Virus record (IMG/VR): IMGVR_UViG_3300047157_000197
Location: 211,971 to 275,970 of that record
Strand: one strand, 5' to 3'
Length of the DNA: 64,000 nt
Position numbers and translations under genes: made by a program. Below the pieces are notes generated by a model. It was not told the origin of the DNA and made no database searches. It worked only from the letters and a program-made list of their open reading frames with translations. This document shows, in pieces, positions 1,744-38,072 of the stretch. Every line of letters starts with the position of its first letter. Position 1 is the stretch's first letter.

Positions 1744-1750
1744 AGTAGAT

Positions 1751-4242: not shown

Positions 4243-4949
4243 AAGTAGCATTAATGTTGACAGGACTTGCTAGAAAAGTTCAAGAAGGATATGATGGTTT
4301 TTGGAAATATATTATTGATAATAATGATGTGGATTTATATCTTCATGCTTGGGAATCTAAACCAGATGAAGTAACTAATAATGAAGATAGTGATATTGTA
4401 CATCAAGTTTATCCAAATGCAACTTATGTTAATATTGAGAAACCTTTTAAGTTCACAAAATACAGAGAAGGTATAAAAACACCAAGAGATGATAAATCAA
4501 GACCTCTTACAGATTTTGATGTATTCAGTAATTTTAGAAGTTTTCCTATGTATTATTCTTGGCAATCTACTTATGAAAATATCAAATCTTCAAACATTGA
4601 TTATGATTGTATTATAAGAAGTAGATACGATATTGGTGGAGATAATTTAAATATATCTGAGTTTGATTTAAATAAAATATTCACATCAAATCATCATTGG
4701 AAAAACAGTCATGTTCACGATGATAATTTTTACATATCAAATCAAAGTAATTCTGATAAAGTATTTCCTACTATATTTGAAAACATAGTTGAATTTAATA
4801 GAAGTAAAGGTATGATGGATAGTGCAGAAGAAAATCTAACTAAGTACTTAGAAAGAATAGGATTAATAAATATCTCAGAAAAATCAGATAAAATAAAATT
4901 TGATTTATTAAGAGATAATAAAGTTTGGTGGCCAAAAGATATAAAATGA
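4239..4949 (+). CDS. putative glycosyltransferase-like protein
   Basis: KVALMLTGLAR, YLHAW, YDCIIRSRYD pattern seen in capsule-locus proteins. Confidence 0.5.
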   Translation: MKVALMLTGLARKVQEGYDGFWKYIIDNNDVDLYLHAWESKPDEVTNNEDSDIVHQVYPNATYVNIEKPFKFTKYREGIKTPRDDKSRPLTDFDVFSNFRSFPMYYSWQSTYENIKSSNIDYDCIIRSRYDIGGDNLNISEFDLNKIFTSNHHWKNSHVHDDNFYISNQSNSDKVFPTIFENIVEFNRSKGMMDSAEENLTKYLERIGLINISEKSDKIKFDLLRDNKVWWPKDIK

Positions 4950-5620
4950 AAATAGGAATTAACTTAGTAGGAGTATCTTATAACAATGCAATAACTGGTG
5001 GACGTTTACGAAACTATGAAGATGCAATAGAAAACTTTCATACTTACATTGTAGAACCATTTAGAGAAAAGGGATATAATGTCCAATTTTATTTATATAG
5101 TTACGAAAATGAAAAACAAGATAAGATAATAAACGATTACAGACCTTGTATGAAATCGCAATTCGTAAAACCAGATTATAATAAATTAGGTGGTGGGACA
5201 AAAGTTTCTGAAGGATACAAAGTTATGTCAGTTAGTTATCTAAATAGTTTAGAACAATTAAAGAATCAAGATTTAGATTTAATTATATCAACTAGATACG
5301 ATATTAAGTTTCTTAAAAATCCATTTGAAGAATATAATTTTGATTTTGATAAAATGAATTTCTTATGGAGAGAACCAGAACTTAAAGATTTACCATTAGT
5401 TAATGATACTTTTTTGGTATTTCCATATAAAATGTTAGATAATGTTGTTGATTCTATAATTGAAATGGAAGAAAATCCACCACAAGGTAAAAATATAGCA
5501 ATGCATAATTGGTATTTACCCATGGTAAATCAAGTTGGAGAAGATAAAGTACAATGGGTTGACGATGAATTCAGAACCGCAATACAGAATGAGTTATACA
5601 TATTAACAAGAAAGACATAA
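4946..5620 (+). CDS. putative glycosyltransferase-like protein, paralog-like to 4239
   Basis: KIGINLVG, DLIISTRYD; likely start ATG 4946. Confidence 0.45.
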   Translation: MKIGINLVGVSYNNAITGGRLRNYEDAIENFHTYIVEPFREKGYNVQFYLYSYENEKQDKIINDYRPCMKSQFVKPDYNKLGGGTKVSEGYKVMSVSYLNSLEQLKNQDLDLIISTRYDIKFLKNPFEEYNFDFDKMNFLWREPELKDLPLVNDTFLVFPYKMLDNVVDSIIEMEENPPQGKNIAMHNWYLPMVNQVGEDKVQWVDDEFRTAIQNELYILTRKT

Positions 5621-5623
5621 TAT

Positions 5624-6382
5624 ATGAATAAATTAATAAGTGGATATTGGTGGGCATGGAAAGAGATAGAAGCAGGAAAGAAATCTATGCAAACTCTAAG
5701 AAAGTATTATCCTGATGCTGATTTGTTTATTAATGTAGATTATGAAGGTGATGTAGATGGTTATACCAAAGTAGGTAAAGAACTAAATGCAACAGTTACT
5801 CGTAATAATTTTCAGTTAGGATATTGTGGAAACTTTGGTGATAGAGATATAGGATATGATTATTGGTCAAAAGAAAAAGCAGTAGAATGGTTAAGAGGAG
5901 TATATGATGCTTGTACTAAAACTGATTCAAAGTATATGATGTTGTTTGAAGAAGATGATTTTGTATTAAAGAACATCTCAATCTTAGATACAGATTTTTC
6001 AATAGCAATTCATCCAACTGCACCATCACCAGTTAGAATGAGACCAAATCTAATACCAAAACAGTTTTTAGATTATTCTAAAGAGATTGGTGGTATTGGA
6101 GATTGTCCTGGTTATGCAAGTGGTGGGGGAACTATTTTTAATAGAGAACATTATATGGATAGTTACGAAAGAATATTAGATAAGTTTACAGATGTATATG
6201 ATGATTTCTGTAAAATAAATAAAATATTTGGTTGGGAAGATTTTTTATTCCAATACATTTTTATGTTAGGTGGATATGAAGTTACACAAAATCATGATTT
6301 ATGTGAACTATGGGAAGTACCAAACTTTGAGGGATTTGAAATATTAACTGGTTGTAAAGACCCAAACTTAATTACACTATAA
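5624..6382 (+). CDS. putative GT-A glycosyltransferase
   Basis: YMMLFEEDD (DxD-like), GGGTIF, GWED. Confidence 0.5.
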   Translation: MNKLISGYWWAWKEIEAGKKSMQTLRKYYPDADLFINVDYEGDVDGYTKVGKELNATVTRNNFQLGYCGNFGDRDIGYDYWSKEKAVEWLRGVYDACTKTDSKYMMLFEEDDFVLKNISILDTDFSIAIHPTAPSPVRMRPNLIPKQFLDYSKEIGGIGDCPGYASGGGTIFNREHYMDSYERILDKFTDVYDDFCKINKIFGWEDFLFQYIFMLGGYEVTQNHDLCELWEVPNFEGFEILTGCKDPNLITL

Positions 6383-7191
6383 TGGATGATGATACTTACA
6401 CAATACTAGGTTGTATTACAAAATATAAGGCAGATGATATAAGACCTTATGTAGAATCAATTGAACAGACAGGTTTTAAAGGTAGAAAAGTAATGTTGGT
6501 ATATGATGTACCACAAGAAACTATTGATTATCTTAAATCAAAAGGATGGGATTTGTTTGGAGGAGAACTTCAACAACATATAATCTTACAGAGGTTTAGA
6601 GATTTATATAAACTATTAGGTTCAGAAATAAAAGGTACAGTTATTTGGACTGATGTTAAGGATGTGATATTTCAAAAAGACCCAACTGATTGGATTGAGC
6701 ATAATATGGAAGATGATATATTATCATTCTCAGAATGTATCACATTTAAAAATGACCCTTGGGCGTGTGTAAATGCAGGAACTTCTTTTCCTATGGAGTG
6801 GGAATGGTTACAAAATAAAACATCTTATTGTGCAGGAACTATCGTTGGTGATGCTTGTTATCTTAGAGATTTATTCATCGATATTTACAGATGGAGTATG
6901 ACAAGTTCAAACCCAGGCCAGTTATCAGACCAAGCAGCTTATAATGTGTTAATTAACTTACATCATATTAGTGATTGTGTTCAAACAGTAAAACAGGAAG
7001 AGGGATTTGTTACCCAATTAGGAACTGTGTTGGTAAAGAAAGATGAGTTTAAAGATGTTCTATTAGAACCAACACCAATCGTAGATGAAAACTATATAGT
7101 AAAGAATCAAAATGGAGAACCTTTCTGTTTAGTACATCAGTACGATAGAATACCAGCATTTAAAGAATTTATTTATAACAAATACAAATAA
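6382..7191 (+). CDS. putative GT-A glycosyltransferase
   Basis: WTDVKDVIFQ, SDQAAYN, HQYDR. Confidence 0.6.
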   Translation: MDDDTYTILGCITKYKADDIRPYVESIEQTGFKGRKVMLVYDVPQETIDYLKSKGWDLFGGELQQHIILQRFRDLYKLLGSEIKGTVIWTDVKDVIFQKDPTDWIEHNMEDDILSFSECITFKNDPWACVNAGTSFPMEWEWLQNKTSYCAGTIVGDACYLRDLFIDIYRWSMTSSNPGQLSDQAAYNVLINLHHISDCVQTVKQEEGFVTQLGTVLVKKDEFKDVLLEPTPIVDENYIVKNQNGEPFCLVHQYDRIPAFKEFIYNKYK

Positions 7192-8084
7192 TGAAAGTAG
7201 TAATATCAATTTTCTGTTTACCATATGAGATAGATGATTTGGAAAATACACTAAATCAACTAAAGAAGGCATCTTATTATATAGATAAAAAAATAGATTG
7301 GTGTTTAGATGTAACGATGTGTTTGGCAGATGATATGGTAAATTGGAATAAATCATCTTTACCAAAGAAGTTTTTTGAAGATAAATTATTAAAATTATTA
7401 TCAATAACAGATTGGTGTACGAAGAATATTCAAACTTCAACAGAAATAAAAGGATGTGTATCTCAGAGAAGATATTCTTTAGAAAAACATAGAGAAGCAG
7501 ATTACTTTATTTGGTTAGATACAGATATTATATTTGATGAAAGAACGTTGTTCTATATCGAACAAAGTATAAAAGGTACAAATAAAGATTATTTACAAAC
7601 AATCATTACACCAGAAATTGTTAGAGTTTGGGATAATACTTGGGATTGTATTGTAAATGAACAATTCTTAGATAAACCACTTGAATATCAAAAAACAAAT
7701 GACCCTTATAAAGATAGTGGTATCAAAGGAGATATTAGTATTGTACCTGTAAATAATTCAAACTCCCCTCAATCAAGATTTAAATTTGCAGGAGGATGGT
7801 TCACTTGTATAAGTGGAAAACTTCTAAATAGAATTGGAATACCAGATTCATTTGCTCACTATGGTTATGAAGATACCTTTTTAATGGTGGGTAGTGAAAA
7901 ACTCGTTAGAGAACAAAATGAAGAAATTCATCAATTCAAAATAAAAAACCTAGTAGTTTGTGAAAACTACAAATATAGAGGACATTATCATTACCTAAAT
8001 TCTCTCTCAGTTTACGATAGAAGAGAGGAATTTAAAAAAATATCCCATGATAATTTCATATCAGAAGTAAAAATAATACAATAA
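7191..8084 (+). CDS. putative GT-A glycosyltransferase
   Basis: FIWLDTD, GGWF, YGYED. Confidence 0.55.
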   Translation: MKVVISIFCLPYEIDDLENTLNQLKKASYYIDKKIDWCLDVTMCLADDMVNWNKSSLPKKFFEDKLLKLLSITDWCTKNIQTSTEIKGCVSQRRYSLEKHREADYFIWLDTDIIFDERTLFYIEQSIKGTNKDYLQTIITPEIVRVWDNTWDCIVNEQFLDKPLEYQKTNDPYKDSGIKGDISIVPVNNSNSPQSRFKFAGGWFTCISGKLLNRIGIPDSFAHYGYEDTFLMVGSEKLVREQNEEIHQFKIKNLVVCENYKYRGHYHYLNSLSVYDRREEFKKISHDNFISEVKIIQ

Positions 8085-8155: not shown

Positions 8156-8212
8156 AACATTCCCCCAAAAAGGGCAGTTCTACTTAACAATCCCCATAGA
8201 GGGCAGTTCTAC
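8156..8212 (+). repeat. tandem 27-28 nt repeat with CCC/GGG hairpin in the operon leader
   Basis: aacattcccccaaaaagggcagttctac / aacaatccccatagagggcagttctac. Confidence 0.8.
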
Positions 8213-8284: not shown

Positions 8285-8794
8285 TTGAAGTACGCTACAT
8301 TAAATGTATTTAAAATATTCATTTTATGTATCTTTGTTTTATTACCGACAGGTTCTAATGAGATACATACAAGTGATGACAACCTCATTAAAGTCGGTGA
8401 AGTGACCAACGAAATCCGAATGGGACAGTTTGCAGGTAACCGAAACCTAGCAGTTGGTGTCAAGAATATCCTCGAAGAATTATTAATGGATTTAGATTAT
8501 GATTTATCAGACCAAGCATCTACGCAAATAAATGTAAGATTGGTCTTTTTTGATATAAAAAATATTGGAACATCGGTTGCGGTGTTTCATAAAGATGTTT
8601 CATTAACGCAAATTATTGCGATTGGTGAATTAGAAGTCAAGGGAAAAGTTAAAAAACGTACTACTCAAAAAGGAACGAGTAAAACAATTTCTACTAGTAC
8701 TCTTGTAGTTGCACAAGACGGAACATTTAACCAACAAACAGCCTCAATTGCTTTAAAGAAAGTATGTGAGGCAATTATTAAGGATTTATTATGA
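8285..8794 (+). CDS. exported CsgG/HfaB-like (TolB-N fold) protein
   Basis: TTG start with GGAG; hydrophobic signal; LAVGVKNILEELL...SIALKKVC pattern parallels 11855. Confidence 0.45.
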   Translation: MKYATLNVFKIFILCIFVLLPTGSNEIHTSDDNLIKVGEVTNEIRMGQFAGNRNLAVGVKNILEELLMDLDYDLSDQASTQINVRLVFFDIKNIGTSVAVFHKDVSLTQIIAIGELEVKGKVKKRTTQKGTSKTISTSTLVVAQDGTFNQQTASIALKKVCEAIIKDLL

Positions 8795-10440
8795 AAAAAA
8801 TTTTATTATTATTAATTAGTGTATTTTTTACACTATCTGTATCTGGTCAGAATGACCCCGCTGAGATAAATTATAGTCCAGTAAATACAGTAACAAAAGT
8901 AGGGGATACTTTAGTTATGAAGTTCCAATACAACAAACAAGATGGAGGAGATTTGACATTAGCTCAATTCGATTTCGAATATAACAACAAATTGTTATCT
9001 TACATCTCAAGTACCTCACAAGCACCAACAGGTGCATCATTTGCTAGAAACAATTGGACAGGGTATAAGTTTGTACCTAAAGCAAATACATCAGAAGATG
9101 ATATGGATGTACAATACACTTGGTGGAAAGATGAAGCAGGAAATGCTTCCTATTCTACTTCTGCTGATTGGAGTGTAGAGAGAACTACAATCCAAACCTC
9201 AGCTGCATACGAAGATGGTGGAGAATTTGTAAAGTATAGCTTCAAAATAAAGGATAAGTTTGGTAGTGGGTATGATAACTACAACAATATCATTAAAGTG
9301 AATTGGGCAAACTACCAAAAAGCAGATGGAACAAAAATTCAAACTATTAAATCACCATCTACACAATCACTAAGTGGTATCGAGGGTGGTAATGCTGGTG
9401 CATTTACTATTAACCTTAAAACTGCAAATTCAACTAAAACAGATTATTCTTATACTATTAAGAATGGTGCAGGTGAATCAGTTGCAACTGGTACTTTTGA
9501 TGAAAGTGGACAAGCATCTGTAAGTGGTTTAGAAAACAACGTAACTTATACTGCTGAAGCAAACTTAGCCGAAGATGCAACTTACTTAGATGAAGTAGTT
9601 ACTGTATCTGATTTGGCATTAGTATTCGCTGAAGCAATTGGAGCAGGTTCTGGTCCAAGTGGTGGTTCAACTACATTTGATTATTTCATACAAGATATAA
9701 TGGGTGATGTTGTTGGTAGTGATAATGGAGTAGATTTCCAAGATTCATATGAGATACTTGCTTACCTACAAGGTGTAACAAGTGGTAATACAAACTTAAT
9801 CACACAAGATGGACAAACGGAAGATTATAGTGGTATTGAATCTACATATGGTGCAGTTACTAATAATACAGTAACCTTCGCTAAATCATTCACACCAATT
9901 GATTCAGATGCTACTTCTAAAACAATTGATTTAGCTCATGGTTTAAGAGGTGATGTAAATTTCTCTCACTCATGGGAGCCGAGTGTATCAAGTGGTGAAA
10001 AAGCAACATCAGCTCAAACATCATCATTTAGAATATCATCGGCAGCTGGTTCTAAATATAGTCAAACAGAAACAGCAAATATCGATTTAATATCTGAAAT
10101 AAATGATGATGGAAGAGTAGTATTTTCAATTAATTCTGAGATTGAAGATATGGTTGGTTCTCAGTTTAATATCGTATATGACCCTAACATATTATCTTTA
10201 GAAAATGTAATATTTGATACTGGTAATGAAATGACTAACTTTTCAAACGTAATCGAAGCAGGGTATGTAAGAGTTGGTTCATTTGACCAAAATGTTAGTT
10301 CAACAGTTAAAGCAGGAACACCATATCAATTAATATTTGTTCCAGTTGAAGATATATCAAATGCATCAGGTTTAATTTCGTTTAGAGTTAAAGAAGGTGT
10401 AAAAGCAGATGGAACACAAATTAATTTTATAATACAATAA
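8791..10440 (+). CDS. secreted protein with N- and C-terminal cohesin-like domains and a dockerin-like Ca-binding region
   Basis: Signal peptide; AQFDFEYNNKLLSY and SQFNIVYDPNILSL cohesin-like strands; VTVSD, GDVVGSDNGVDFQDS, GDVNFSH. Confidence 0.65.
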   Translation: MKKILLLLISVFFTLSVSGQNDPAEINYSPVNTVTKVGDTLVMKFQYNKQDGGDLTLAQFDFEYNNKLLSYISSTSQAPTGASFARNNWTGYKFVPKANTSEDDMDVQYTWWKDEAGNASYSTSADWSVERTTIQTSAAYEDGGEFVKYSFKIKDKFGSGYDNYNNIIKVNWANYQKADGTKIQTIKSPSTQSLSGIEGGNAGAFTINLKTANSTKTDYSYTIKNGAGESVATGTFDESGQASVSGLENNVTYTAEANLAEDATYLDEVVTVSDLALVFAEAIGAGSGPSGGSTTFDYFIQDIMGDVVGSDNGVDFQDSYEILAYLQGVTSGNTNLITQDGQTEDYSGIESTYGAVTNNTVTFAKSFTPIDSDATSKTIDLAHGLRGDVNFSHSWEPSVSSGEKATSAQTSSFRISSAAGSKYSQTETANIDLISEINDDGRVVFSINSEIEDMVGSQFNIVYDPNILSLENVIFDTGNEMTNFSNVIEAGYVRVGSFDQNVSSTVKAGTPYQLIFVPVEDISNASGLISFRVKEGVKADGTQINFIIQ

Positions 10441-10458
10441 TAAAAAGGAAACAGAAAA

Positions 10459-10836
10459 ATGAAAAAAATATTAACATTACTTAGTTTGGTTTTAATAATG
10501 GGTTGTTACCAAGATGATGATTTAGTAACACTTTATCCAGACCAAGAAGTACCACAATCTTTACAGATTAAAGATTTGATTGGTATTAAATTAGAAAACA
10601 CTATCGTAACTGATAGAGTTGCGATGAATGTAAAATTACCACTTGATGGTAAATATAGAATAAAGATTAGACATGGTATGACCAATGAACTAATCTCACA
10701 AGAGATGATAACTGCTGGTGAGGGTGATAACCTTCTTAAAGTGTATGTTGCATCTTTAGAGAAAAGTGGTTATGTGATTCAATTAACAGATGAATTTCAT
10801 AATATATTAGGAAATCAGTCTTTCGTAGTAAATTAA
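10459..10836 (+). CDS. small lipoprotein with T9SS CTD-like Ig domain
   Basis: Lipobox IMG-C; YRIKI...GDNLLKVYVASLEKSGYVIQL pattern. Confidence 0.5.
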   Translation: MKKILTLLSLVLIMGCYQDDDLVTLYPDQEVPQSLQIKDLIGIKLENTIVTDRVAMNVKLPLDGKYRIKIRHGMTNELISQEMITAGEGDNLLKVYVASLEKSGYVIQLTDEFHNILGNQSFVVN

Positions 10837-10837
10837 A

Positions 10838-10975
10838 ATGTTAAATAGTATATTTTTAGTGTCAGTTGGATTTATTACAATGTGGTTAGTATGTAAGTAC
10901 GAAATAACAAAATGTAAAATTGGTAAATCATGTGATTGTAAAGAATGTAGAGAAAAAAGGAGAGCAAAATTATGA
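10838..10975 (+). CDS. small membrane protein with Cys-rich tail
   Basis: 45-aa ORF read by eye: one TM then CxCxxC. Confidence 0.4.
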   Translation: MLNSIFLVSVGFITMWLVCKYEITKCKIGKSCDCKECREKRRAKL

Positions 10976-11274
10976 GTGAAAAAAAAGAAGGATTCTTTGC
11001 ACAAATAAAGAATCAAGTAATAGCTGGGGTTGGTATAGTACTAACTACATTGGGTGGTGTTTTTATAGATGAGGTTAAATCATTTGTAGGAATAGAAGAT
11101 GATTCAGAACCACAAACTGAGGTTGTACAAGAAAACAATCAATCAGTAAATGTAGAAGGACCTACTATCGTAGTAAACATACCAGAACAACAGGTAAAAG
11201 AAAAAGTAATTATCAAGGAAGTTAAAGTTCCTGTTAAGAAGAAAAAAGAAAAAGAACAAGAAATTGATTGGTAA
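10972..11274 (+). CDS. single-TM hypothetical protein
   Basis: One hydrophobic helix, GGAG upstream. Confidence 0.6.
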   Translation: MSEKKEGFFAQIKNQVIAGVGIVLTTLGGVFIDEVKSFVGIEDDSEPQTEVVQENNQSVNVEGPTIVVNIPEQQVKEKVIIKEVKVPVKKKKEKEQEIDW

Positions 11275-11292
11275 TTTAAATAAAGGAGAAAA

Positions 11293-11520
11293 ATGAGTAG
11301 TTTCAAAAAATGGTGGAAAGTAAATGGACAAGGTATCGGATTTATAGCTGGTATAGTGTTTCTAAATGCTTACTTTTTAATATTAGGTGATTTAATGAAC
11401 AAACACGAATGGTTAGCTGGTGTTTGGTTATTATGTTTCTTTGGATTTGCAGGATGGTATTCTTGGCAAATGAAGATTCATGGTTGGAGATTGCCTAAGG
11501 ATATAAAAGATACCCACTAA
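11293..11520 (+). CDS. small 2-TM membrane protein
   Basis: Two hydrophobic segments; AAGGAG upstream. Confidence 0.6.
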   Translation: MSSFKKWWKVNGQGIGFIAGIVFLNAYFLILGDLMNKHEWLAGVWLLCFFGFAGWYSWQMKIHGWRLPKDIKDTH

Positions 11521-11556
11521 CGTTTAATATTAATACATGGAGAACAATGATAAACA

Positions 11557-11751
11557 ATGGAAGTAATAAAACAAATTTTCGGAGATAAAATGTCAGACTA
11601 TAAAATAGTTGATATTATGTTGAAAATATGGGTTGCTGGTTTATTATCTATGGTTGTACTTGGTTTAGTTGCTGTGATTAGTCACATCATCATGAACCCA
11701 TCATCAGTAGATAACGCAACATTTGGTGTATTTGATACACTAGGGAGTTAA
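11557..11751 (+). CDS. small membrane protein
   Basis: One TM; start uncertain. Confidence 0.5.
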   Translation: MEVIKQIFGDKMSDYKIVDIMLKIWVAGLLSMVVLGLVAVISHIIMNPSSVDNATFGVFDTLGS

Positions 11752-11854
11752 ATATGAAAAGAATTATAGAATTAATAATCAAGATAGATGATTGGGTAAT
11801 GAAATCATTATATGATATATATCCAGAATTAACCAAACATCAGAAAGATAAAAA

Positions 11855-12574
11855 ATGAGAAATATATTTATTTTAATTTTATGTGTATTATTCACACAAA
11901 ATACTATTGCACAAACTGTTGGTAAAATCAAGGCAGAAACATATCAAGCTGAATTTGAAAAAAAGAAATCAATTGATGATGTATCTGATTACGATGGTCC
12001 ATATATTCCTATAGCTTTACTTAATATATCTGCTAGTGATGGGGTTTACGAAATGTGGCCTGAGTTAAAGGATGCTAGAGTAGGTTTAGGTGTAACAAAC
12101 ATGGTAATAGAGTACTTGGATTGGACAAACAGATTCGAGTTCGTAGAGGAGAAGTCAGAGATTAAGGATAGAATGAAAAATCAATGGGTTGCATCAAGAA
12201 AGGGTGTTTCTCAAAATGAAGTTTATGGAATGGGTAAAGTAATGTTGGCGAATTATTTCGTTACAATAGAGATTTACGATTTCTCAGTTTCAGAAGATGA
12301 GGTTTTATCTTTAAAAGATGGTTCTAAACAAACACAAACAACTCGTTTAGGGTTGCAAGTTCGTTTTACTAATGCCGAGAATGGTACTTACTTTGTAGGT
12401 TCTGGTCTAGGTGAAGCAAATACAGTTAAGACTCAAGAGGGTTTGCTGGGATTAGATTTGGAGGAAATAAACTTCAGACAATCAGCAATTGGGGTAACTA
12501 CCAGAAAAGCATTAGAAACGGCTTCAGCAAGAATAGTAGCAAGAATGATTAGAAAAAAAATATTTCCAAACTAA
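11855..12574 (+). CDS. CsgG/HfaB family protein (curli secretion-channel-like)
   Basis: Signal peptide; GVTNMVIEYL..TNRFEFVEE, ANYFVTIEIYDF, LGLQVRFTNAENG match the CsgG fold pattern. Confidence 0.7.
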   Translation: MRNIFILILCVLFTQNTIAQTVGKIKAETYQAEFEKKKSIDDVSDYDGPYIPIALLNISASDGVYEMWPELKDARVGLGVTNMVIEYLDWTNRFEFVEEKSEIKDRMKNQWVASRKGVSQNEVYGMGKVMLANYFVTIEIYDFSVSEDEVLSLKDGSKQTQTTRLGLQVRFTNAENGTYFVGSGLGEANTVKTQEGLLGLDLEEINFRQSAIGVTTRKALETASARIVARMIRKKIFPN

Positions 12575-12577
12575 TGA

Positions 12578-14353
12578 ATGAGAAAACTACTATCGATACT
12601 TGCATTTTGGTTCATAACTAATCTTAGTTATGGACAAACATTCACACAGACATTTGTAGATAGATGTACTGGTGAAGTACAAGTTGTTACCGCTAATTTT
12701 ACAAGTGGTTCTGCTATCGTATCCTTTTACAACGAAGCTAAATTATTCACATACACACAATATACTAATGGTGAACTCCAACAATGGTTAGTTCAGAAAT
12801 ATGCATGGTGGGCTGCACTATCCCCATGTTCATCTGCGAGTAACGCAACCAACAACGCTAATAATACTGCAAACAACGCAACCAATAATACCAATTCAGG
12901 TTCAAGTGGTTCTAGTGGTGGTGGAGATAGTGGTTCAAGTGGTTCATCAGGTGGTAGTGGAGATAGTGGTGGTGGAAGTGGAGATTCAGGCGGTGGAGGT
13001 TCTGATGGTGGAAGTGGAGATTCTGGTGGCGGTGGTTCTGATGGCTCTGATGGTGGTGGTGGAGATTCTGATGGAGGAGGAGGCGATTCCGATGGCGGGG
13101 GTGGTGATTCCGATGGTGGCGGTGATTCCGATGGTGGAGATAGTGATGGTGGGTCTGGTGATTCCGATTCTGATGGTGGAGATAGTGATGGTGGAGATAG
13201 TGATTCTGATTCTGATGGTGGAGATAGTGATTCCGATTCCGATAGTGATTCTGATTCCGATAGTGATTCTGATTCCGATAGTGATTCTGATTCTGACTCT
13301 GATGGCGATAGTGATGATGATTCTGATTCTGACTCTGATGGCGATAGTGATGATGATTCTGATGGGGATTCTGATGATGATTCCGATGGAGATAGTGATG
13401 ATGAATCTGATGATGATTCCGATAGTGATGAAGATTCTGATGAATCTGATGAAGATAGTGAAGAAAGTGATGAGGAAGATAGTGAAGAAGAATCCGATGA
13501 AGAAGAAAAGGAAGAGGAAGAAGAAAGTGATGAAGAAGAGGAAGAAGAAGAAAAAGAGGAAGAAGAGGAAGAAGACGATGAAGAAGAAGATGAGGAAGAA
13601 GAAGATGAGGAAGATGAGGAAGATGAGGAAGACGAAAAAGATGAAGAAGATGAGGAAGAAGAAGAAGAAAAGAAAAAGAAATTTATGCCAATAGTATTGA
13701 AGGCAGATGTAATGTCAATGCAAGCTCTAACAAGAGAATACAACCAAGTTCTTGCAATTGGAGCATCACAAGCATCAATCTATGGTGATATAACAAATAC
13801 AGCAACTTTACAAGTATATGATAACTTAAAACAAGTTGGGTTATCATTGGGTAGAAGTAAAGTAAGTTTGAATGAAAATTATCAAGTAACTTGGGTAGAT
13901 GGAGCAAACGTATCTTATATGAGAAATTATCAGATGAACTCAACTACATTATCTCTCAGTAGAATGAAACCAATGGGTAAGTATGGAACTGTTGGATTGG
14001 GTGTTAGTTATTCATTTATGTTTGGTAAAGATGCTCTTGGAAATACAATGCCAAAAATGGGTACTATGGGATATAATGTTCTTTATACAAATATGGTAAA
14101 AATAAATGATAGAATAATGTACACACCAGCATTGATTGGTGCACAAAACCCATTATCTTATACAGAAAAAGTTGAGGGGTTCGATGCCTTTTCATCAACA
14201 TCAAAAGATTTTATAGGAATCCTTGCAAATTCCTTTACAATACAATTAACAAAAAGTTTTTCGTTTAATGCAGGTTGGACGATAATTTATAGTAGTAATG
14301 AGTTTGTTCCAATTATGAATTCGTTTATGATAGGAGCAAAGTTACCCTTTTAA
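12578..14353 (+). CDS. exported protein: N-terminal domain, Gly/Ser/Asp then Asp/Glu stalk, C-terminal beta-barrel-like domain
   Basis: Signal peptide; about 260 aa of low complexity; about 220 aa of amphipathic strands ending in terminal Phe (GAKLPF). Confidence 0.65.
   Translation: MRKLLSILAFWFITNLSYGQTFTQTFVDRCTGEVQVVTANFTSGSAIVSFYNEAKLFTYTQYTNGELQQWLVQKYAWWAALSPCSSASNATNNANNTANNATNNTNSGSSGSSGGGDSGSSGSSGGSGDSGGGSGDSGGGGSDGGSGDSGGGGSDGSDGGGGDSDGGGGDSDGGGGDSDGGGDSDGGDSDGGSGDSDSDGGDSDGGDSDSDSDGGDSDSDSDSDSDSDSDSDSDSDSDSDSDGDSDDDSDSDSDGDSDDDSDGDSDDDSDGDSDDESDDDSDSDEDSDESDEDSEESDEEDSEEESDEEEKEEEEESDEEEEEEEKEEEEEEDDEEEDEEEEDEEDEEDEEDEKDEEDEEEEEEKKKKFMPIVLKADVMSMQALTREYNQVLAIGASQASIYGDITNTATLQVYDNLKQVGLSLGRSKVSLNENYQVTWVDGANVSYMRNYQMNSTTLSLSRMKPMGKYGTVGLGVSYSFMFGKDALGNTMPKMGTMGYNVLYTNMVKINDRIMYTPALIGAQNPLSYTEKVEGFDAFSSTSKDFIGILANSFTIQLTKSFSFNAGWTIIYSSNEFVPIMNSFMIGAKLPF
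12896..13670 (+). repeat. coding low-complexity repeat: (GGGDSD)n, (SD)n, poly-D/E
   Basis: gattct/gatagt/gattcc hexamers then gaagaa/gatgag runs. Confidence 0.95.
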
Positions 14354-14362
14354 GGAGATAAT

Positions 14363-14893
14363 ATGAGAAAAATAGATTTTAAATTAGTAGTAATAGGTAT
14401 ATTGATAGGAGTATCAGTATGGCAATTTTTAAACCCAACAATACAAGAAGTAGAAAAGATTAAAGAAATCGAAGTACTTCAGACTGTAATTGATAGTATC
14501 TATGTTGAAAAACTGATAGAGAAGAAAGTTTTTGTACCAAAGTATATTACAAAAATAAAAAGAGATACTATAATCAAAGAAGTAATTGTAGAAAAAATTA
14601 AAACTAAAATCAAAAAGGTTTATATAGATAAACCATATGAAGTAATCGTACCGAAGTATGAATTACCAGAATCAAAGTGGTATGCTGGATTTGCATATCA
14701 ATGGGATATGGAAAATTACTTTAGTGGAGCAAATGTACAAGTTTTACATAAATTCAAAAATGATAAAATGTTTAGTATAGATGTTGGATTTAGAAACGAT
14801 TTAATAGATTTAGAAAATAATCTTGGAAAATTAAGACCTTATGTTGGAGGAACAATATATTTCAGATTAGATAAACCAAAAGATAATTTTTAA
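14363..14893 (+). CDS. N-terminally anchored protein with beta-stalk and C-terminal beta strands
   Basis: TM, IEKKVFVP/DTII repeats, alternating-hydrophobic C-terminus. Confidence 0.55.
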   Translation: MRKIDFKLVVIGILIGVSVWQFLNPTIQEVEKIKEIEVLQTVIDSIYVEKLIEKKVFVPKYITKIKRDTIIKEVIVEKIKTKIKKVYIDKPYEVIVPKYELPESKWYAGFAYQWDMENYFSGANVQVLHKFKNDKMFSIDVGFRNDLIDLENNLGKLRPYVGGTIYFRLDKPKDNF

Positions 14894-16986
14894 TGAAGAA
14901 ACTTCTTTTCATATTATTACTGTTACCAACTTTAGTATTTGGTCAGACCGGTGCTGGTTATACTCCAAGTGGTGAAGGAAAAATAAATTATAAATCCTAC
15001 AAAACTCACTCTGGTAATGGTGCAGCATCATCTTATAATAGTGTATCATATAGTGGTGGAGCAGGTTCAACTGCTGAGTTTGATGCAATGGTTGATACAA
15101 ACCAACCAGGTACAACATTAACTCATGTTGGTGAAGCAACACCATGGAGTTCAGGTGGTTTAAATGGAGGACACCCACCGAGATGGGGTAATTCGTATTT
15201 TGCAATAGTTTATTCAGGTTGGTTCAAACCAAATAAAAATGGAACTTATAATTTCAAAACTTATGCAGATGATTCATCAGAAACTAGATATAGAGAAGTA
15301 GGAACTACTACTTGGCAAACAATTACATTTCAATGGGGTTGTTGTTCTAATCGATATGGTACTGCAAATTTAGATAATACTAAATGGTATGAATTTGAAT
15401 TTAGATACCAAGAATATGGTGGAGGGGATTATTACTATTTTGGTTATTCAATACCAGCAAATTCAAGTTCACCAAATTACAATTGGATAAGTTCCAATCA
15501 TCAATTTGGAACTTGGACAAATGTAGACCCAAGTGGTGGAACAACTACTACAACAGAACCCGAAGTTGATTTAGATTTAGAATTCCATTCTCAATTAGCA
15601 CCAGAACAATATAGATTTGGTGTGTATTATGATGCATCAAATGAACAAGATGGTTCAACATATTTCAATACTTCTACAATGAATTCAAAATATTATTTAG
15701 ATGATGATGGAAGTAAAGATATAACTGATTATCTAAATTTGGTTAAGATGACTGATGGTTTGAAAGCAACCACAGAAAGTGGAAGTGTAGAGTGGGTAGT
15801 TTTATATCCATATGATTCTACAAACGATAGACATCGAATACTGATTGATGGTAGAGAATTTACTGCTACTAATCCTGATACAGACCCAAATGATTTAAAA
15901 TCATTACAATTACTTGATTTATATGATGGAACAATTACTGTTCATAGTGTAAGTGAGGGTTCGGGTGGTTGGCAACAATATTACATACCAGGTAATCTAA
16001 CAACTGCTATATCTAATAGTTCATATGGAAGTGGTGTGATTAGAAATGCTGGTAGTTATTTTGGTATTAGAGCAGAGTTCTCATTTGAAGATGTTGAAAT
16101 ATATAAAGGACATAAAATAGTTGTTAATAATCCATCTGATAATATAGAAGGGTGGACAGCTGAAGAATTTATGGATGATTACATTACAGTTGCAGATGTA
16201 GTTGCAGGATTTAATGAATTAGCAGGTGGTGGAATATTCGGTGGATATAAAGGAGATTTGAATGGAGTTCAATTACAAAACTCAGATGTTAATCAAGATG
16301 GTGAGTTTGATTTTCAAGATAGTCAAATAGGATTGGCTTTCTTAAATGGTGATGATACTCCTTTTAATGGTTACCTACAAGAGATAATGAGAATAGTTCC
16401 TAAATCAGAATACGATAATACTACAACTACTAATTGGAAAACACAAACAAATAAATCACCATCAACAAATTTTACCTTTAGTATTATAGATACGATACAA
16501 ACCTTAGAATATAAAGTTTCATTTATAGGTGATGTAAATCTTTCACATTCTGCACCACAATCAACAAGTTCACCTGGTACTCAATCAACATCAGTCAGAA
16601 ATTCATCTTCTCAAAAATCAAGTGAATTAGAAGTGTTGTTAGATATTGGTATGGAAGAAGATAAACTTGTGGTAACATTAGATGTACCACAAAACAATCA
16701 TAACATTGTAGGTTCTGAATTTAGAATAGGATATGATAACACTAGAGTGGAGTTTGATAGAATAGAAACTACTTCTAACTTACAATCATTTTCAGCTGAA
16801 AGAACAAACTACATAAAGTTAGGTTCTATATCTACTGATGGTTCTCAAAATTTAAATGGTGGTGTACAATATAAGATTTACTTTTCACCACAACAAACTT
16901 TTGAATCTATATTAGGATTACTATCAGTTACAAAATCAGAATTAGTAAAACAAAATGGGGGTGGAATAGACCATAAAATAAAATGA
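14893..16986 (+). CDS. secreted PA14 + dockerin-like + cohesin-like protein
   Basis: Signal peptide; PA14 motifs YSGWF, GTYNFKTYADDS, YQEYGGGD; ITVAD, SDVNQDGEFDFQDS, GDVNLSH; SEFRIGYDNTRVEF; C-terminal half paralogous to 8791. Confidence 0.7.
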   Translation: MKKLLFILLLLPTLVFGQTGAGYTPSGEGKINYKSYKTHSGNGAASSYNSVSYSGGAGSTAEFDAMVDTNQPGTTLTHVGEATPWSSGGLNGGHPPRWGNSYFAIVYSGWFKPNKNGTYNFKTYADDSSETRYREVGTTTWQTITFQWGCCSNRYGTANLDNTKWYEFEFRYQEYGGGDYYYFGYSIPANSSSPNYNWISSNHQFGTWTNVDPSGGTTTTTEPEVDLDLEFHSQLAPEQYRFGVYYDASNEQDGSTYFNTSTMNSKYYLDDDGSKDITDYLNLVKMTDGLKATTESGSVEWVVLYPYDSTNDRHRILIDGREFTATNPDTDPNDLKSLQLLDLYDGTITVHSVSEGSGGWQQYYIPGNLTTAISNSSYGSGVIRNAGSYFGIRAEFSFEDVEIYKGHKIVVNNPSDNIEGWTAEEFMDDYITVADVVAGFNELAGGGIFGGYKGDLNGVQLQNSDVNQDGEFDFQDSQIGLAFLNGDDTPFNGYLQEIMRIVPKSEYDNTTTTNWKTQTNKSPSTNFTFSIIDTIQTLEYKVSFIGDVNLSHSAPQSTSSPGTQSTSVRNSSSQKSSELEVLLDIGMEEDKLVVTLDVPQNNHNIVGSEFRIGYDNTRVEFDRIETTSNLQSFSAERTNYIKLGSISTDGSQNLNGGVQYKIYFSPQQTFESILGLLSVTKSELVKQNGGGIDHKIK

Positions 16987-17321
16987 GAAAGTATATAGTA
17001 TTAATATTGTTCGTTATACTATCTTGTCAACCAGAAGAGTTGATGATTGTAGAACCACTACCACAATACGAAATGATATTTGAAGAATCTGAATCATCAG
17101 TAACAGATGGACAAGAATTTTCTTTTGAAATAATATCAGAAGAAGAACATCATTTAGTTATATCAAAAGATGGTTCTGTTATTACAAAAGAATCATTTTT
17201 ACCTACACTTGAATTGAATACAAGAAAGATTTATACTAAATCACTTCCTACTGATTTGTTACAATTGGAACTAATTAACTCTAATGGTGTTATAAAATCA
17301 ACTTTTATACAAATATATTAA
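16983..17321 (+). CDS. small lipoprotein with T9SS CTD-like domain, paralog of 10459
   Basis: Lipobox ILS-C; NTRKIYTKSL aligns with NLLKVYVASL. Confidence 0.5.
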   Translation: MRKYIVLILFVILSCQPEELMIVEPLPQYEMIFEESESSVTDGQEFSFEIISEEEHHLVISKDGSVITKESFLPTLELNTRKIYTKSLPTDLLQLELINSNGVIKSTFIQIY

Positions 17322-17853: not shown

Positions 17854-18501
17854 ATGTTCATATTCACAGAAGAAAATATAAAAGATATTAAGAATGCCGT
17901 TTACACAACAGATGGTATAAAGGATAAGCATGTGAAAAAGATTGAAGGAATCAAAGATGGTTTGTTCAAAGATTTTAATTACTCTAAATACAAAGTAAAA
18001 AATCCCCCTAAAAATAATTCAATGGTAGTTTATAATGAACTACAATTCTTAAAAGATTTACCAGAAGATGATGCATATGTTGAAGAACATGATGATATTG
18101 AAAAAGTATTTGAGCAAGTTTGTAAAGAAAACAACGTAGAATATCCAAAGGAACTCGTAGAGAGTTTAATCAAATCAGCCGCTGGTATTATATTAGATTT
18201 AAAATATCACTATAATAGACCAAGACCATTTCAACTTTCTAGCCATTATAATATTAAATTAGGTGAAAAAGTATTGGAATCAATGAAAACACCATCATAC
18301 CCATCAGGACATTCAGCACAAGGTATTTTAGTAGGGAAGGTACTACAAACTAAATTACCAATCAATACAGATGCCTTTTTGGAAGCAGGAAAACGAATAT
18401 CATATAGTAGAAATATAGGAAGAGCACACTATCCATCTGATTCAAGAATGGGTGAGATTATTGGTGATGTTATGTTTAACCATATAAAGCACAAGATTTA
18501 A
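17854..18501 (+). CDS. PAP2/vanadium haloperoxidase-superfamily phosphatase
   Basis: KYHYNRPRP, SYPSGH, SRNIGRAHYPSD. Confidence 0.85.
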   Translation: MFIFTEENIKDIKNAVYTTDGIKDKHVKKIEGIKDGLFKDFNYSKYKVKNPPKNNSMVVYNELQFLKDLPEDDAYVEEHDDIEKVFEQVCKENNVEYPKELVESLIKSAAGIILDLKYHYNRPRPFQLSSHYNIKLGEKVLESMKTPSYPSGHSAQGILVGKVLQTKLPINTDAFLEAGKRISYSRNIGRAHYPSDSRMGEIIGDVMFNHIKHKI

Positions 18502-21506: not shown

Positions 21507-21556
21507 GTTCGGTATGATTATTGAACTATATACTAAATAAATCTATATTTATAAAT

Positions 21557-38050: not shown

Positions 38051-38072
38051 ATGAAAAATAAGTACGAAAAAA

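What the first reader, a model, noticed from the sequence alone, without database searches (positions are those of the whole stretch)
8285..17321. Phage-like operon for an exported surface assembly: CsgG-like proteins, cohesin/dockerin proteins, lipoproteins and a beta-barrel
Seen: across 9 kb of contiguous genes, every product has a signal peptide, lipobox or TM anchor. They comprise two CsgG-like proteins (8285, 11855), two large proteins each with dockerin-like Ca loops and cohesin-like domains (8791; 14893, which also has a PA14 domain), a stalked beta-barrel protein (12578) and several small membrane proteins. Known: CsgG forms the curli outer-membrane channel, cohesin-dockerin pairs assemble cellulosomes, PA14 binds glycans, and tailed-phage virion proteins normally do not use Sec. 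Inference: proteins carrying both cohesin and dockerin could chain into a lectin-tipped coat on the infected cell or its vesicles, affecting adhesion, aggregation, superinfection exclusion or grazing. I know of no described phage system like this.
Basis: partly seen in the sequence, partly recalled or inferred. Interest (0 to 1): 0.9.

Follow-up and report, generated by a model that had tools for sequence, protein, structure and literature searches.

The report
Phage-encoded lectin display and envelope module
A roughly 276-kb phage of Flavobacterium-like bacteria carries a conserved 9-kb block of exported proteins (sugar-binding heads on cohesin/dockerin scaffolds, surface lipoproteins, two CsgG-fold proteins and an outer-membrane barrel). 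The block most likely re-dresses the infected cell's surface, and I found no phage system like it described.

Summary
All 11 consecutive products carry a signal peptide, lipobox or TM anchor: 10 of 11 pass a hydrophobicity test, against 6 of 84 elsewhere in the window (P about 8e-9).

- **Protein 11855** has a CsgG fold (AF2 plus Foldseek, E 3e-8). Sixteen of 36 homologs hit Pfam CsgG.
- **Protein 8285** is a shorter paralog of 11855 (hhalign 93%).
- **Proteins 8791 and 14893** share a dockerin-like plus cohesin tail. Homologs pass the Pfam Cohesin and PA14 thresholds; the window copies do not.
- **Protein 12578** is an N-domain, a repeat-encoded acidic stalk and a roughly 12-strand outer-membrane barrel.

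The window is identical, over the 20.7 kb fetched, to a 275,970-bp IMG/VR viral contig. The module recurs in 65 viral loci and in the cultured Flavobacterium phage immuto (gp013-gp019). There it lies far from the structural genes.

In 47 related loci the cohesin scaffold ends in a T9SS sorting domain. In the window's clade that domain is replaced by small lipoproteins that carry a Bacteroidota surface-export signal.

Best reading: a phage-driven surface display of fast-evolving lectins. Chaining of the scaffolds, the role of the CsgG-fold/barrel platform and the purpose of the module are all untested. Phage CsgG genes were already known in pelagimyophages.

The parts
8285..8794 (+). A169: exported 169-aa short paralog of the CsgG-fold protein
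   Evidence: N-terminal hydrophobic segment. Family profile against the 11855 family: hhalign 93%, E 3.3e-7. Immuto gp019 belongs to this family (99%, E 1e-18). Found in 62 loci.
8791..10440 (+). B549: signal peptide, N-terminal domain, dockerin-like segment (about aa 270-335) and C-terminal cohesin (about aa 425-549); no T9SS sorting domain
   Evidence: Shares a 300-aa tail with 14893. Homologs L018 and L021 hit Pfam Cohesin at 27.6 and 30.2 bits in the C-terminal domain. L013 hits Dockerin_1 at 22.5 bits, residues 296-352. NCBIfam and Pfam find no sorting domain.
10459..10836 (+). C125: small lipoprotein (LIMGC, then YQDDD), predicted surface-exposed; partner of B549
   Evidence: The lipobox is conserved. 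Relatives read C-x-K-D-D/E, which is the published lipoprotein export signal. Paralog of K112. Never co-occurs with the sorting domain. Weak resemblance to the sorting-domain fold (hhalign 34%, E 4e-4).
10972..11274 (+). D100: single-TM inner-membrane protein with a charged C-terminal tail; always immediately upstream of the CsgG-fold gene in distant relatives
   Evidence: Found in 66 loci plus immuto gp016. Its N-terminal 45 aa stay about 75% conserved (estimated by eye) in L156, where 11855's homolog is only 40% identical.
11293..11520 (+). E75: small membrane protein with two TM segments
   Evidence: Hydrophobic segments. Found in 15 loci of the window's clade.
11557..11751 (+). F64: small membrane protein with one TM segment
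   Evidence: Found in 14 loci.
11855..12574 (+). G239: exported CsgG-fold protein; signal peptidase I type here, a lipoprotein in distant clades
   Evidence: AF2 and Foldseek. Transitive Pfam CsgG and LpoB hits. 3573 database clusters. N-termini compared.
12578..14353 (+). H591: signal peptide, N-domain with two invariant Cys (aa 21-102), acidic S/G/D/E stalk encoded by in-frame tandem repeats (aa 103-402) and a C-terminal outer-membrane beta-barrel (aa 403-591, ending in F)
   Evidence: Alignment A4. AF2 model. Foldseek hits are only outer-membrane barrels, led by NanC with TM 0.53 normalised to the target. Tandem repeats. Follows the 11855 homolog in every locus with downstream sequence.
14363..14893 (+). 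I176: N-terminal TM anchor, charged repeat region and a beta-rich C-terminus; restricted to the window's clade
   Evidence: 10 loci. No family match.
14893..16986 (+). J697: signal peptide, PA14/GLEYA-like lectin head (about aa 85-195), middle region, dockerin-like segment (aa 428-486, with a DxNxDGxxDxxD loop at 465-476) and C-terminal cohesin (about aa 575-697); fast-evolving head
   Evidence: Pfam hits in homologs. Head 72% against tail 93-96% identity in the nearest relatives, and 29% against 49% in L016. In L008 and L010 the flanking genes are 53-89% identical while J is 31-33%.
16983..17321 (+). K112: small lipoprotein (ILSC, then QPEE), predicted surface-exposed; partner of J697
   Evidence: Lipobox and export-signal-like acidic residues; relatives read C-Q-K-D-E. 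Always follows the J gene, including in L002-L005 where the pair has moved.

Best explanation
This is a non-structural accessory module of large phages that infect Bacteroidota (Flavobacteriia-like hosts). During infection it uses the host's Sec, lipoprotein and barrel-assembly pathways, and T9SS in most relatives, to install a phage-made assembly in the cell envelope.

The display part consists of scaffold proteins with a variable lectin head (PA14 here; C-type or ConA-like lectins in relatives), a dockerin-like segment and a cohesin. Most relatives anchor the scaffold through a T9SS type A sorting domain. In the window's clade each scaffold is instead followed by a small lipoprotein with a surface-export signal, which I infer replaces that anchor.

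The platform part is a conserved set: an inner-membrane protein (D100), a CsgG-fold protein (G239), its short paralog (A169) and a roughly 12-strand outer-membrane barrel with a repeat-encoded acidic stalk (H591). G239 has a polar hairpin tip and the window copy lacks a lipid anchor. I therefore infer that it acts as a periplasmic ring or plug partner of the barrel, as PelC does for PelB or LptE for LptD, and not as a curli-type channel.

Net effect (inferred): glycan-binding heads are exposed on the infected cell. They either make it stick to particles or sister cells, or mask the phage's own glycan receptors.

Shown: the folds and domains, the export signals, the co-conservation, the faster evolution of the heads and the swap between sorting domain and lipoprotein. 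Inferred: surface location in this clade, cohesin-dockerin pairing, platform function and purpose.
For: - Exported or membrane products cluster far beyond chance.
- Folds and domains.
- The order scaffold-D-G-H-(lectin-dockerin protein)-A is conserved in the related viral loci (65 found through G239) and in immuto gp014-gp019.
- Scaffold, D and G stay together down to 40% G identity.
- Eight of 8 distant scaffolds tested hit Cohesin at or above the Pfam threshold and Por_Secre_tail above it. TIGR04183 scores 43.9 bits.
- The sorting domain (47 loci) and the small lipoproteins (19 loci) are mutually exclusive.
- The lipoproteins match C-x-K-(D/E)2, the Bacteroidota surface-export signal (PMC5080379).
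- Lectin-dockerin proteins without cohesin sit next to the barrel gene in some loci (L038: Lectin_C plus Laminin_G_3).
- The heads diverge faster than the tails.
- In immuto the module sits among replication and nucleotide genes, 65-110 kb from the baseplate, tail, terminase and portal genes.
- Flanking genes also concern the envelope: sugar-nucleotide genes upstream and a PAP2 phosphatase downstream.
Against: - None of the window's own proteins passes a curated Pfam, NCBIfam or PHROG threshold. Every domain name rests on homologs, profiles or models.
- B549 and J697 have no recognisable outer-membrane export signal.
- Cohesin-dockerin binding is untested. The dockerin-like segment is atypical, with one clear Ca loop and a second GDVNxSHS motif about 80 residues away.
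- The topology of the H591 N-domain and stalk is unknown. Two invariant Cys 54 residues apart argue against autotransporter-style export.
- A GH19 endolysin lies inside or within 4 kb of the module in 10 loci. This fits a lysis role equally well.
- There are no expression or proteomic data.
- Family sizes come from iterated HMMs seeded at E<1e-4, so their final E-values are inflated.
Confidence: 0.5

Rival explanations
1. Lysis or egress device. D100 (type II inner-membrane protein) and the outer-membrane components (G239, A169, H591) span the envelope like a spanin, or time lysis as proposed for the phage CsgGF pore. E75 and F64 act as holin-like proteins. The lectin scaffolds are adjacent by coincidence.
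For: A PG_binding_1 plus GH19 endolysin sits directly upstream of the D-like gene in L002-L005 and within 4 kb of G-H in six more loci. D has spanin-like topology, and G is a lipoprotein in distant clades. A lysis-timing role was proposed for the Melnitz CsgGF (PMC9004378).
Against: There is no endolysin in the 64-kb window. In immuto the annotated holin and endolysin pair is about 30 kb from gp016-gp018. G (240 aa, globular CsgG fold) and H (a barrel) look nothing like o-spanins. The cohesin scaffold stays linked to D and G down to 40% identity, which a lysis role does not explain.
Confidence: 0.13
2. The phage brings its own secretion channel. G239 oligomerises into a CsgG-type (type VIII-like) outer-membrane pore, helped by A169 and H591. 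The pore exports the sorting-domain-less scaffolds B549 and J697, or another substrate, across the outer membrane.
For: Full-length structural match to CsgG, including long beta-hairpins at 134-173. This would solve the export problem of the window's clade. H follows G much as csgF neighbours csgG.
Against: The hairpin tip (SEDEVLSLKDGSKQTQ) has no hydrophobic face (sequence). The window copy lacks a lipobox. Cellular relatives of this subfamily are periplasmic domains fused to Ser/Thr kinases or caspase-like domains. No CsgE, CsgF, CsgA or CsgB match was found. G is kept equally in clades whose scaffold uses T9SS.
Confidence: 0.1
3. Virion-associated host-recognition or decoration proteins. 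The lectin-headed proteins are tail-fibre-like or capsid-decorating adhesins, and their variability reflects host range.
For: Fast-evolving lectin heads resemble receptor-binding-protein evolution. One weak phage_tail_N hit (E 0.0057).
Against: Every product carries a Sec signal, lipobox or TM anchor, and relatives carry T9SS sorting domains. These route proteins out of the cytoplasm, where tailed virions assemble. In immuto the module lies far from the structural block. No PHROG structural family matches.
Confidence: 0.05
4. Not phage at all: a bacterial surface-protein island on a mis-assigned contig.
For: Three hits in MAG bins of Flavobacterium, Sediminibacterium and an uncultured Bacteroidetes. 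No hallmark capsid or terminase gene lies inside the window.
Against: The 20.7 kb fetched is identical to an IMG/VR contig. Relatives sit on 250-373-kb viral contigs. The same module is in the cultured myovirus immuto. Only 3 of 185,579 species genomes carry it, all of them MAG contigs. Tara contigs place it beside a RecA-like gene, an exonuclease and a DnaB helicase, and immuto has an exonuclease, a helicase and a nuclease in the same position. Nearly all window genes are on one strand, with phage-typical GroEL, CobS/T-like and methyltransferase genes.
Confidence: 0.02

Closest known systems
Curli-type CsgG/CsgF clusters of pelagimyophages (HTVC008M group) and Methylophilales phage Melnitz
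   Same: A phage-encoded, Sec-exported CsgG-fold protein in a variable, non-structural region next to cell-wall and glycosyltransferase genes. It is widespread in marine viromes and its function is unknown; uptake, 'sibling capture' and lysis timing have been proposed (PMC7029224, PMC9004378). The best BFVD structural match of G239 is such a phage CsgG.
   Different: No CsgF or other curli partner is detectable here. The partners are instead an outer-membrane barrel with an acidic stalk, a short CsgG-fold paralog, an inner-membrane protein and cohesin/dockerin/lectin scaffolds. The hosts are Bacteroidota rather than SAR11 or OM43. The hairpin tip is polar and the window copy is not a lipoprotein.
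Cellulosome-type cohesin-dockerin scaffolding (and non-cellulosomal cohesin/dockerin modules)
   Same: A cohesin domain (Pfam above threshold in homologs) and a dockerin-like Ca-loop segment. Relatives have a scaffold with an anchoring module plus separate lectin-dockerin proteins.
   Different: Encoded by a phage. The payloads are lectins, not enzymes. Cohesin and dockerin-like parts sit in one chain. Anchoring is by a T9SS sorting domain or a surface lipoprotein rather than SLH or sortase. The dockerin is atypical and binding is untested.
T9SS type A cargo proteins of Bacteroidota
   Same: In 47 related loci the scaffold has a signal peptide plus a C-terminal Por_Secre_tail/TIGR04183 domain above threshold.
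   Different: The window's own scaffolds lack the domain, and here the cargo is phage-encoded. I found no paper describing phage-encoded T9SS cargo. That search was limited.
PelC-PelB and LptE-LptD (lipoprotein ring or plug plus outer-membrane barrel)
   Same: G239 also matches PelC (E 2e-5) and LptE (E 5e-4) structurally. H591's barrel weakly matches PelB (E 0.054) among other barrels. The two genes are strictly adjacent.
   Different: There is no sequence homology. No polysaccharide or LPS transport components have been identified as partners. The fold matches are generic for these classes.
Phage superinfection-exclusion envelope proteins (for example T5 Llp, phi80 Cor); from my own knowledge
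   Same: Phage-encoded exported lipoproteins or outer-membrane proteins made in the infected cell that alter receptor availability.
   Different: Those are single small proteins that block one receptor. Here there is an 11-gene modular assembly with lectin heads, and no receptor is known.

Membership tests
CsgG (PF03783; curli / type VIII secretion channel) | CsgG alpha/beta fold over the full length | tested here: met
   AF2 pLDDT 81.6. Foldseek top hits 6l7c, 4uv3 and 4uv2, E 2.6e-8 to 1e-7, TM 0.53-0.63. Sixteen of 36 homologs hit PF03783. The window protein itself has no Pfam hit.
CsgG (PF03783; curli / type VIII secretion channel) | N-terminal lipobox (outer-membrane lipoprotein) | tested here: not met
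   The window copy ends its signal peptide ...NTIAQ|T with no canonical lipobox. Distant phage homologs do have one (LFSCK, LIGCK, LSGCG).
CsgG (PF03783; curli / type VIII secretion channel) | Amphipathic transmembrane hairpins that build a 36-strand barrel in a nonamer | tested here: inconclusive
   The model has long hairpins (134-152 / 156-173, and 179-194). The tip, residues 146-162, is polar or charged on both faces and SEDE is conserved. No multimer modelling was available.
CsgG (PF03783; curli / type VIII secretion channel) | Genomic partners CsgE, CsgF, CsgA and CsgB | tested here: not met
   No such Pfam hits in any module protein. The H N-domain profile finds no CsgF in the PDB or Pfam.
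Cohesin (PF00963) | Match to the cohesin profile above the gathering score | tested here: inconclusive
   Window B549 and J697 have no hit. Orthologs L018 and L021 score 27.6 and 30.2 bits in the same C-terminal domain. Eight distant scaffolds score 24.1-49.2 bits (GA 24.1). My family HMM picks up the Pfam-positive cohesin of immuto gp015. The family profile against PDB cohesins gives E 0.013.
Dockerin type I (PF00404) | Two tandem EF-hand-like Ca-binding loop-helix segments; profile match | tested here: inconclusive
   J697 residues 465-476 read DVNQDGEFDFQD, fitting DxNxDGxxDxxD. The first segment is degenerate. Pfam E 0.86. The best homolog scores 22.5 bits against GA 22.9; others give E 0.0013-0.006. 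PDB dockerin E 0.48 at the right position.
PA14 / GLEYA lectin domain (PF07691 / PF10528) | Profile match in the N-terminal head of J697 | tested here: inconclusive
   The window protein shows only GLEYA, E 0.0087, over aa 103-128. P0236, 69% identical, carries PF07691 and PF10528. Six of 25 family members hit PA14, best 4.8e-18.
T9SS type A cargo (Por_Secre_tail, PF18962 / TIGR04183) | C-terminal sorting domain | tested here: not met
   Absent from all window proteins. Present above threshold on the scaffold in 47 related loci and in immuto gp015.
Bacteroidota surface-exposed lipoproteins (LES-dependent) | Lipobox Cys followed by polar or basic residue and then two or more acidic residues at +3 to +6 | tested here: met
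   C125 reads C-YQDDD and K112 reads C-QPEE. Relatives read C-AKDDE, C-VKDEE and C-QKDE. The motif is as defined in PMC5080379. Surface exposure itself is not testable here.
Type Va autotransporter | C-terminal 12-strand barrel with N-terminal passenger threaded through it via a helical linker | tested here: inconclusive
   The barrel class is consistent (BrkA, NalP and EspP among the hits, E 0.009-0.06). No Autotransporter Pfam hit. Only a 5-residue helix lies before the barrel. Two invariant Cys 54 residues apart in the N-domain argue against threading, from my own knowledge.
Two-component spanins | Adjacent type II inner-membrane protein and small outer-membrane lipoprotein within a lysis cassette | tested here: inconclusive
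   D100 has the topology. An endolysin is adjacent in L002-L005 but absent from the window. G is a large globular protein, not a short proline-rich lipoprotein.

The most novel reading that the evidence does not exclude
Aquatic Bacteroidota phages encode a self-contained, cellulosome-like lectin display system. Cohesin/dockerin scaffolds with swappable glycan-binding heads are exported by the host T9SS, or handed to phage-made surface lipoproteins. They are mounted on a dedicated platform made of CsgG-fold proteins and a beta-barrel. The infected cell thereby gains a new adhesive or receptor-masking surface. This would be a new class of phage-driven cell-surface engineering. It would also give a first functional context for the unexplained 'phage CsgG' genes that are abundant in ocean viromes.
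Probability: 0.4. Interest if true: 0.85.

Novelty: new variant of a known kind. Interest (0 to 1): 0.72.

Why it matters
The CsgG-fold gene of this module has 3573 clusters (at 90% identity) in public data, including Tara Oceans samples. Between this phage and the cultured phage immuto it is as conserved as GroEL. The module is therefore common and under selection.

Phage CsgG genes have had no agreed function since 2020. Here the CsgG-fold gene stays linked to a scaffold whose sorting domain names its export route (T9SS) and whose heads name its ligand class (glycans). That makes the question testable.

The module exists in a cultured pair, phage immuto and Flavobacterium sp. LMO8, so knock-outs, fractionation and adhesion or superinfection assays are feasible.

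If infected Flavobacteriia become sticky, or mask their own receptors, that bears on particle colonisation, phage-host encounter rates and carbon flux in blooms. The modular cohesin/dockerin/lectin parts may also be useful for surface display in Bacteroidota.

Tried and rejected
- Direct Pfam, PHROG and NCBIfam scans of the window proteins gave nothing above threshold.
- Single-sequence and profile searches of PDB sequences for G239, A169 and the H N-domain found nothing useful.
- Megablast of the 9 kb, and tblastn of J697 and B549, against 50,697 phage records gave no match. Only G239 and a distant-clade scaffold (L038, not a window protein) hit, and only in immuto.
- The mature N-terminus of H591 reminded me of the CsgF constriction peptide. 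Neither Pfam nor a PDB profile search supports this, so I dropped it.
- The idea that C125 and K112 are split-off T9SS sorting domains got only hhalign 34%, E 4e-4. I keep it as a lead, not a claim.
- I tried to reach the window's contig through immuto's terminase. The 80 best hits were all closer relatives of immuto, so the contig's own terminase was not seen.
- The sigma-70 promoter and terminator scan was below shuffle expectation and does not fit Bacteroidota promoters. No TAnnTTTG box lies in the module's gaps. There are no tRNAs.
- The alignment-based locus search with the broad CsgG-like alignment failed for lack of conserved stretches.
- The genome-contig scan gave only three MAG contigs, so no cellular ancestor system was identified. 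More distant cellular G-like proteins sit in unrelated contexts: kinase or caspase fusions, or next to DUF3187.
- My first window-versus-immuto BLAST accidentally included all loci. I repeated it correctly.


Full report
**What is there**

Between 8285 and 17321 lie eleven + strand ORFs that abut or overlap by 1-4 nt. The only larger gaps are 135 nt (before 10972) and 103 nt (before 11855). I label the ORFs by product length: A169 (8285), B549 (8791), C125 (10459), D100 (10972), E75 (11293), F64 (11557), G239 (11855), H591 (12578), I176 (14363), J697 (14893) and K112 (16983).

A simple hydrophobicity test finds an N-terminal hydrophobic stretch in 10 of the 11 products. H591 falls just under the cut-off but has a clear signal peptide. 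Elsewhere in the window the count is 6 of 84 ORFs (hypergeometric P about 8e-9). The lipoboxes of C125 and K112, the signal peptides and the TM segments are conserved in relatives.

**Is it a phage?**

- The 20.7 kb around 11855 is identical to IMG/VR contig IMGVR_UViG_3300047157_000197 (275,970 bp). Relatives lie on viral contigs of 250-373 kb.
- Nearly all window ORFs are on one strand at about 30% GC. PHROG hits include GroEL, CobS/CobT-like ATPases and a DNA methyltransferase.
- G239 has a 54% identical homolog in the cultured myovirus Flavobacterium phage vB_FspM_immuto, as gp017. That is as conserved as GroEL (52%) and a WecE-like aminotransferase (54%) between the two phages.
- A scan of 185,579 species genomes found the gene on only three MAG contigs, from Flavobacterium, Sediminibacterium and an uncultured Bacteroidetes.
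- No capsid or terminase gene lies in the 64-kb window, and I could not reach the rest of the contig. The phage call therefore rests on the points above.

**The two CsgG-like proteins**

G239 has no direct Pfam hit. Sixteen of 36 diverse homologs hit Pfam CsgG (best 1.9e-17) and 8 hit LpoB. Its AF2 model (pLDDT 81.6) matches CsgG structures over the full length (E 2.6e-8, TM about 0.6). PelC, FlgT, GNA1162 and LptE follow. The best viral match is a phage CsgG.

A169 shows no BLAST similarity to G239. Its family profile aligns to the G239 family at 93% probability, E 3.3e-7, making it a shorter paralog.

Three points speak against a curli-type channel:
- The window copy has no lipobox, although distant phage homologs do.
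- The hairpin tip (SEDEVLSLKDGSKQTQ) is polar on both faces.
- Cellular relatives of this subfamily are periplasmic domains fused to kinases or caspase-like domains.

No CsgE, CsgF, CsgA or CsgB is detectable.

**The scaffolds**

B549 and J697 share a 300-aa C-terminal module (27% identity, E 6e-12). The window copies are below the Pfam thresholds, but their orthologs are not:
- Cohesin at 27.6 and 30.2 bits in the same C-terminal domain (L018, L021).
- Dockerin_1 at 22.5 bits, against a cutoff of 22.9, at the expected place (L013).
- PA14/GLEYA down to 4.8e-18 in J-type heads.
- P0236, 69% identical to J697, carries PA14.

A family profile weakly finds cellulosomal cohesins in the PDB (E 0.013), and a dockerin at the right position (E 0.48). 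J697 residues 465-476 read DVNQDGEFDFQD, a textbook Ca loop.

The heads evolve faster than the tails. Head and tail identities are 72% and 93-96% in the nearest relatives, and 29% and 49% in L016. Heads are swapped between PA14 and C-type lectin types, and proteins range from 635 to 908 aa, while the flanking genes stay at 53-90% identity.

**The barrel protein**

H591 has three parts:
- A conserved N-domain with two invariant Cys.
- A 300-residue S/G/D/E stalk encoded by in-frame tandem repeats. Its length varies among relatives.
- A C-terminal beta domain ending in Phe.

In the AF2 model the N-domain scores pLDDT 74-86 and the 10-11 C-terminal strands score 70-86. Every Foldseek hit is an outer-membrane barrel. 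These include NanC (TM 0.53 normalised to the target), the autotransporter beta domains BrkA, NalP and EspP, FapF, BamA and PelB. The E-values are weak, 4e-3 and worse. The fold class is supported; a specific family is not.

**Co-conservation**

Iterated HMM searches over all fetched loci (seeds at E<1e-4) give a fixed order in distant phages:
1. Scaffold of about 635-658 aa.
2. D-like TM protein.
3. G.
4. H.
5. An optional lectin-dockerin protein.
6. An A-like protein.

Immuto shows the same order as gp014 (dockerin-like), gp015 (cohesin), gp016 (D), gp017 (G), gp018 (H) and gp019 (A). One distant scaffold aligns across immuto gp013-gp015, so that gene is split there. On Tara contigs where G is only 40% identical, the scaffold, D and G are still together, next to a RecA-like gene, an exonuclease and a DnaB helicase.

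In immuto the module lies at 10.5-16.4 kb among replication and nucleotide genes. The baseplate, tail, terminase and portal genes are at 81-123 kb. This argues against a virion role.

**The destination signal**

All eight distant scaffolds tested carry Cohesin at or above threshold and a T9SS type A sorting domain above it (Por_Secre_tail 33.8-52.4 bits, GA 27; TIGR04183 43.9 bits). They are therefore cargo of the host's type IX secretion system.

The window's clade lacks this domain. Each of its scaffolds is instead followed by a small lipoprotein (C125, K112; paralogs). Across loci the two solutions never co-occur: 47 loci have the sorting domain, 19 have the lipoproteins and none has both.

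The lipoproteins carry C-x-K-(D/E)2-type motifs: CYQDDD and CQPEE here, CAKDDE and CQKDE in relatives. This is the signal that flips Bacteroidota lipoproteins to the cell surface (PMC5080379). Any homology between the lipoproteins and the sorting domain is only hinted at (hhalign 34%, E 4e-4).

Some loci add a lectin-dockerin protein without cohesin next to H, for example Lectin_C plus Laminin_G_3. That matches the scaffold-plus-payload logic of cellulosomes.

**Most likely mechanism (confidence about 0.5)**

The phage makes the infected cell display fast-evolving lectins on cohesin/dockerin scaffolds. These are anchored by T9SS in most relatives and by surface lipoproteins in this clade.

A conserved platform accompanies the scaffolds: inner-membrane D100, CsgG-fold G239 and A169, and barrel H591. 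Given G's polar hairpin and its structural similarity to PelC and LptE, I favour a ring or plug partner for the H barrel over a channel formed by G alone.

The folds, signals, synteny, anchor swap and head variability are shown. Surface exposure in this clade, cohesin-dockerin binding, the platform's role and the purpose are inferred. The purpose could be adhesion or 'sibling capture', as proposed for phage curli genes in PMC7029224. It could equally be masking of glycan receptors against superinfection and against loss of progeny on debris.

**Rivals**

- **Lysis or egress device (0.13).** A GH19 endolysin lies inside the module in L002-L005 and within 4 kb of it in six other loci. D100 is spanin-like in topology, and a lysis role was proposed for the Melnitz CsgGF (PMC9004378). 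Against this, the window has no such endolysin, immuto's holin and endolysin pair is about 30 kb away, and the scaffold linkage goes unexplained.
- **Phage-borne CsgG-type export channel for the scaffolds (0.10).** This would solve the export problem. It is weakened by the polar hairpin, the missing lipid anchor and the persistence of G in T9SS-using clades.
- **Virion proteins (0.05).**
- **Bacterial island (0.02).**

**Comparison with what is known**

Phage CsgG/CsgF clusters have been described in pelagimyophages and Melnitz with unknown function. This is a different version: no CsgF, different partners and Bacteroidota hosts. Virus-encoded dockerin and signal-peptide proteins have been suggested to promote adhesion in archaeal viruses (PMC13452462).

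My searches were limited. Within them I found no description of a phage-encoded cohesin/dockerin lectin scaffold, of phage-encoded T9SS cargo, or of the link between these and a CsgG-fold/barrel platform. The immuto record only labels single genes. I rate the module a new variant of a known kind (phage accessory envelope modules containing CsgG-like proteins). I give it a 0.4 chance of being a genuinely new type of phage-driven surface engineering.

**Limits**

- There was no signal-peptide predictor and no multimer modelling, and only two monomer models were built.
- The H591 model is confident only in its two folded domains.
- All domain names for the window's own proteins are transitive.
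- The final E-values of the iterated HMMs are inflated.
- IMG/VR membership is not independent proof of viral origin.

Noticed in passing
window 8172-8183 and 8201-8212: Exact direct repeat GGGCAGTTCTAC, two copies 29 bp apart, in the 200-nt gap upstream of the first module gene. It is unique in the window (0.03 expected). It is present in L006 (the window's own contig) and as one copy in the next relative, L007. It may be a regulatory site.
   Followed up: partly
window 346-8084 and 17854-18501: The module is flanked by envelope-related genes. Upstream are a HAD plus sugar nucleotidyltransferase fusion and a WecE-like aminotransferase (54% identical to immuto gp177), with a GT2 in relatives. 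Downstream is a PAP2 lipid phosphatase. The first 18.5 kb of the window looks devoted to cell-surface chemistry.
   Followed up: partly
window 12884-13783 (within 12578-14353): The H591 stalk is encoded by in-frame tandem repeats (periods 9-42 nt), and its length differs among close relatives (proteins of 479-630 aa). The long ORFs at 12793-13743 (-) and 12801-13694 (+) are artefacts of this repeat.
   Followed up: yes
L002 8239-9096 and nine other loci: A PG_binding_1 plus GH19 endolysin sits inside or within 4 kb of the module in 10 loci. No homolog is detectable in the 64-kb window.
   Followed up: partly
window 21521-22495; 32470-32781; 45449-45640; 62861-63079: Further predicted exported or membrane ORFs lie outside the module. 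They include a 324-aa lipoprotein (LLLTSC) at 21521.
   Followed up: no
window 36311-39392, 42646-44262, 47041-48402, 26490-27533: CobT/CobS-like (MoxR-type) ATPase pair, GroEL (52% identical to immuto's), a DNA methyltransferase and a radical SAM protein. These are typical accessory genes of large aquatic phages.
   Followed up: no
L156 6407-6733 (Tara contig) against window 10972-11274: The N-terminal 45 residues of D100 (MSEKKEGFFAQIKNQVIAGVGIVLT...) are about 75% conserved (estimated by eye) even where the neighbouring CsgG-fold protein is only 40% identical. This suggests contact with a conserved host component.
   Followed up: no
P0316, P0341, P0342, P0356; L159 1-2732: Cellular relatives of G239 are periplasmic domains fused to Ser/Thr kinases or caspase-like domains. 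In one contig two tandem G-like genes precede a CSDDDD lipoprotein and a DUF3187 protein. This may be a cellular counterpart of the G-plus-barrel pair.
   Followed up: partly
window 60001-64000: The GC skew, about +0.2 across the rest of the window, drops to about 0, and GC rises to 36% in the last 2 kb. This suggests a change of genome module or transcription direction.
   Followed up: no
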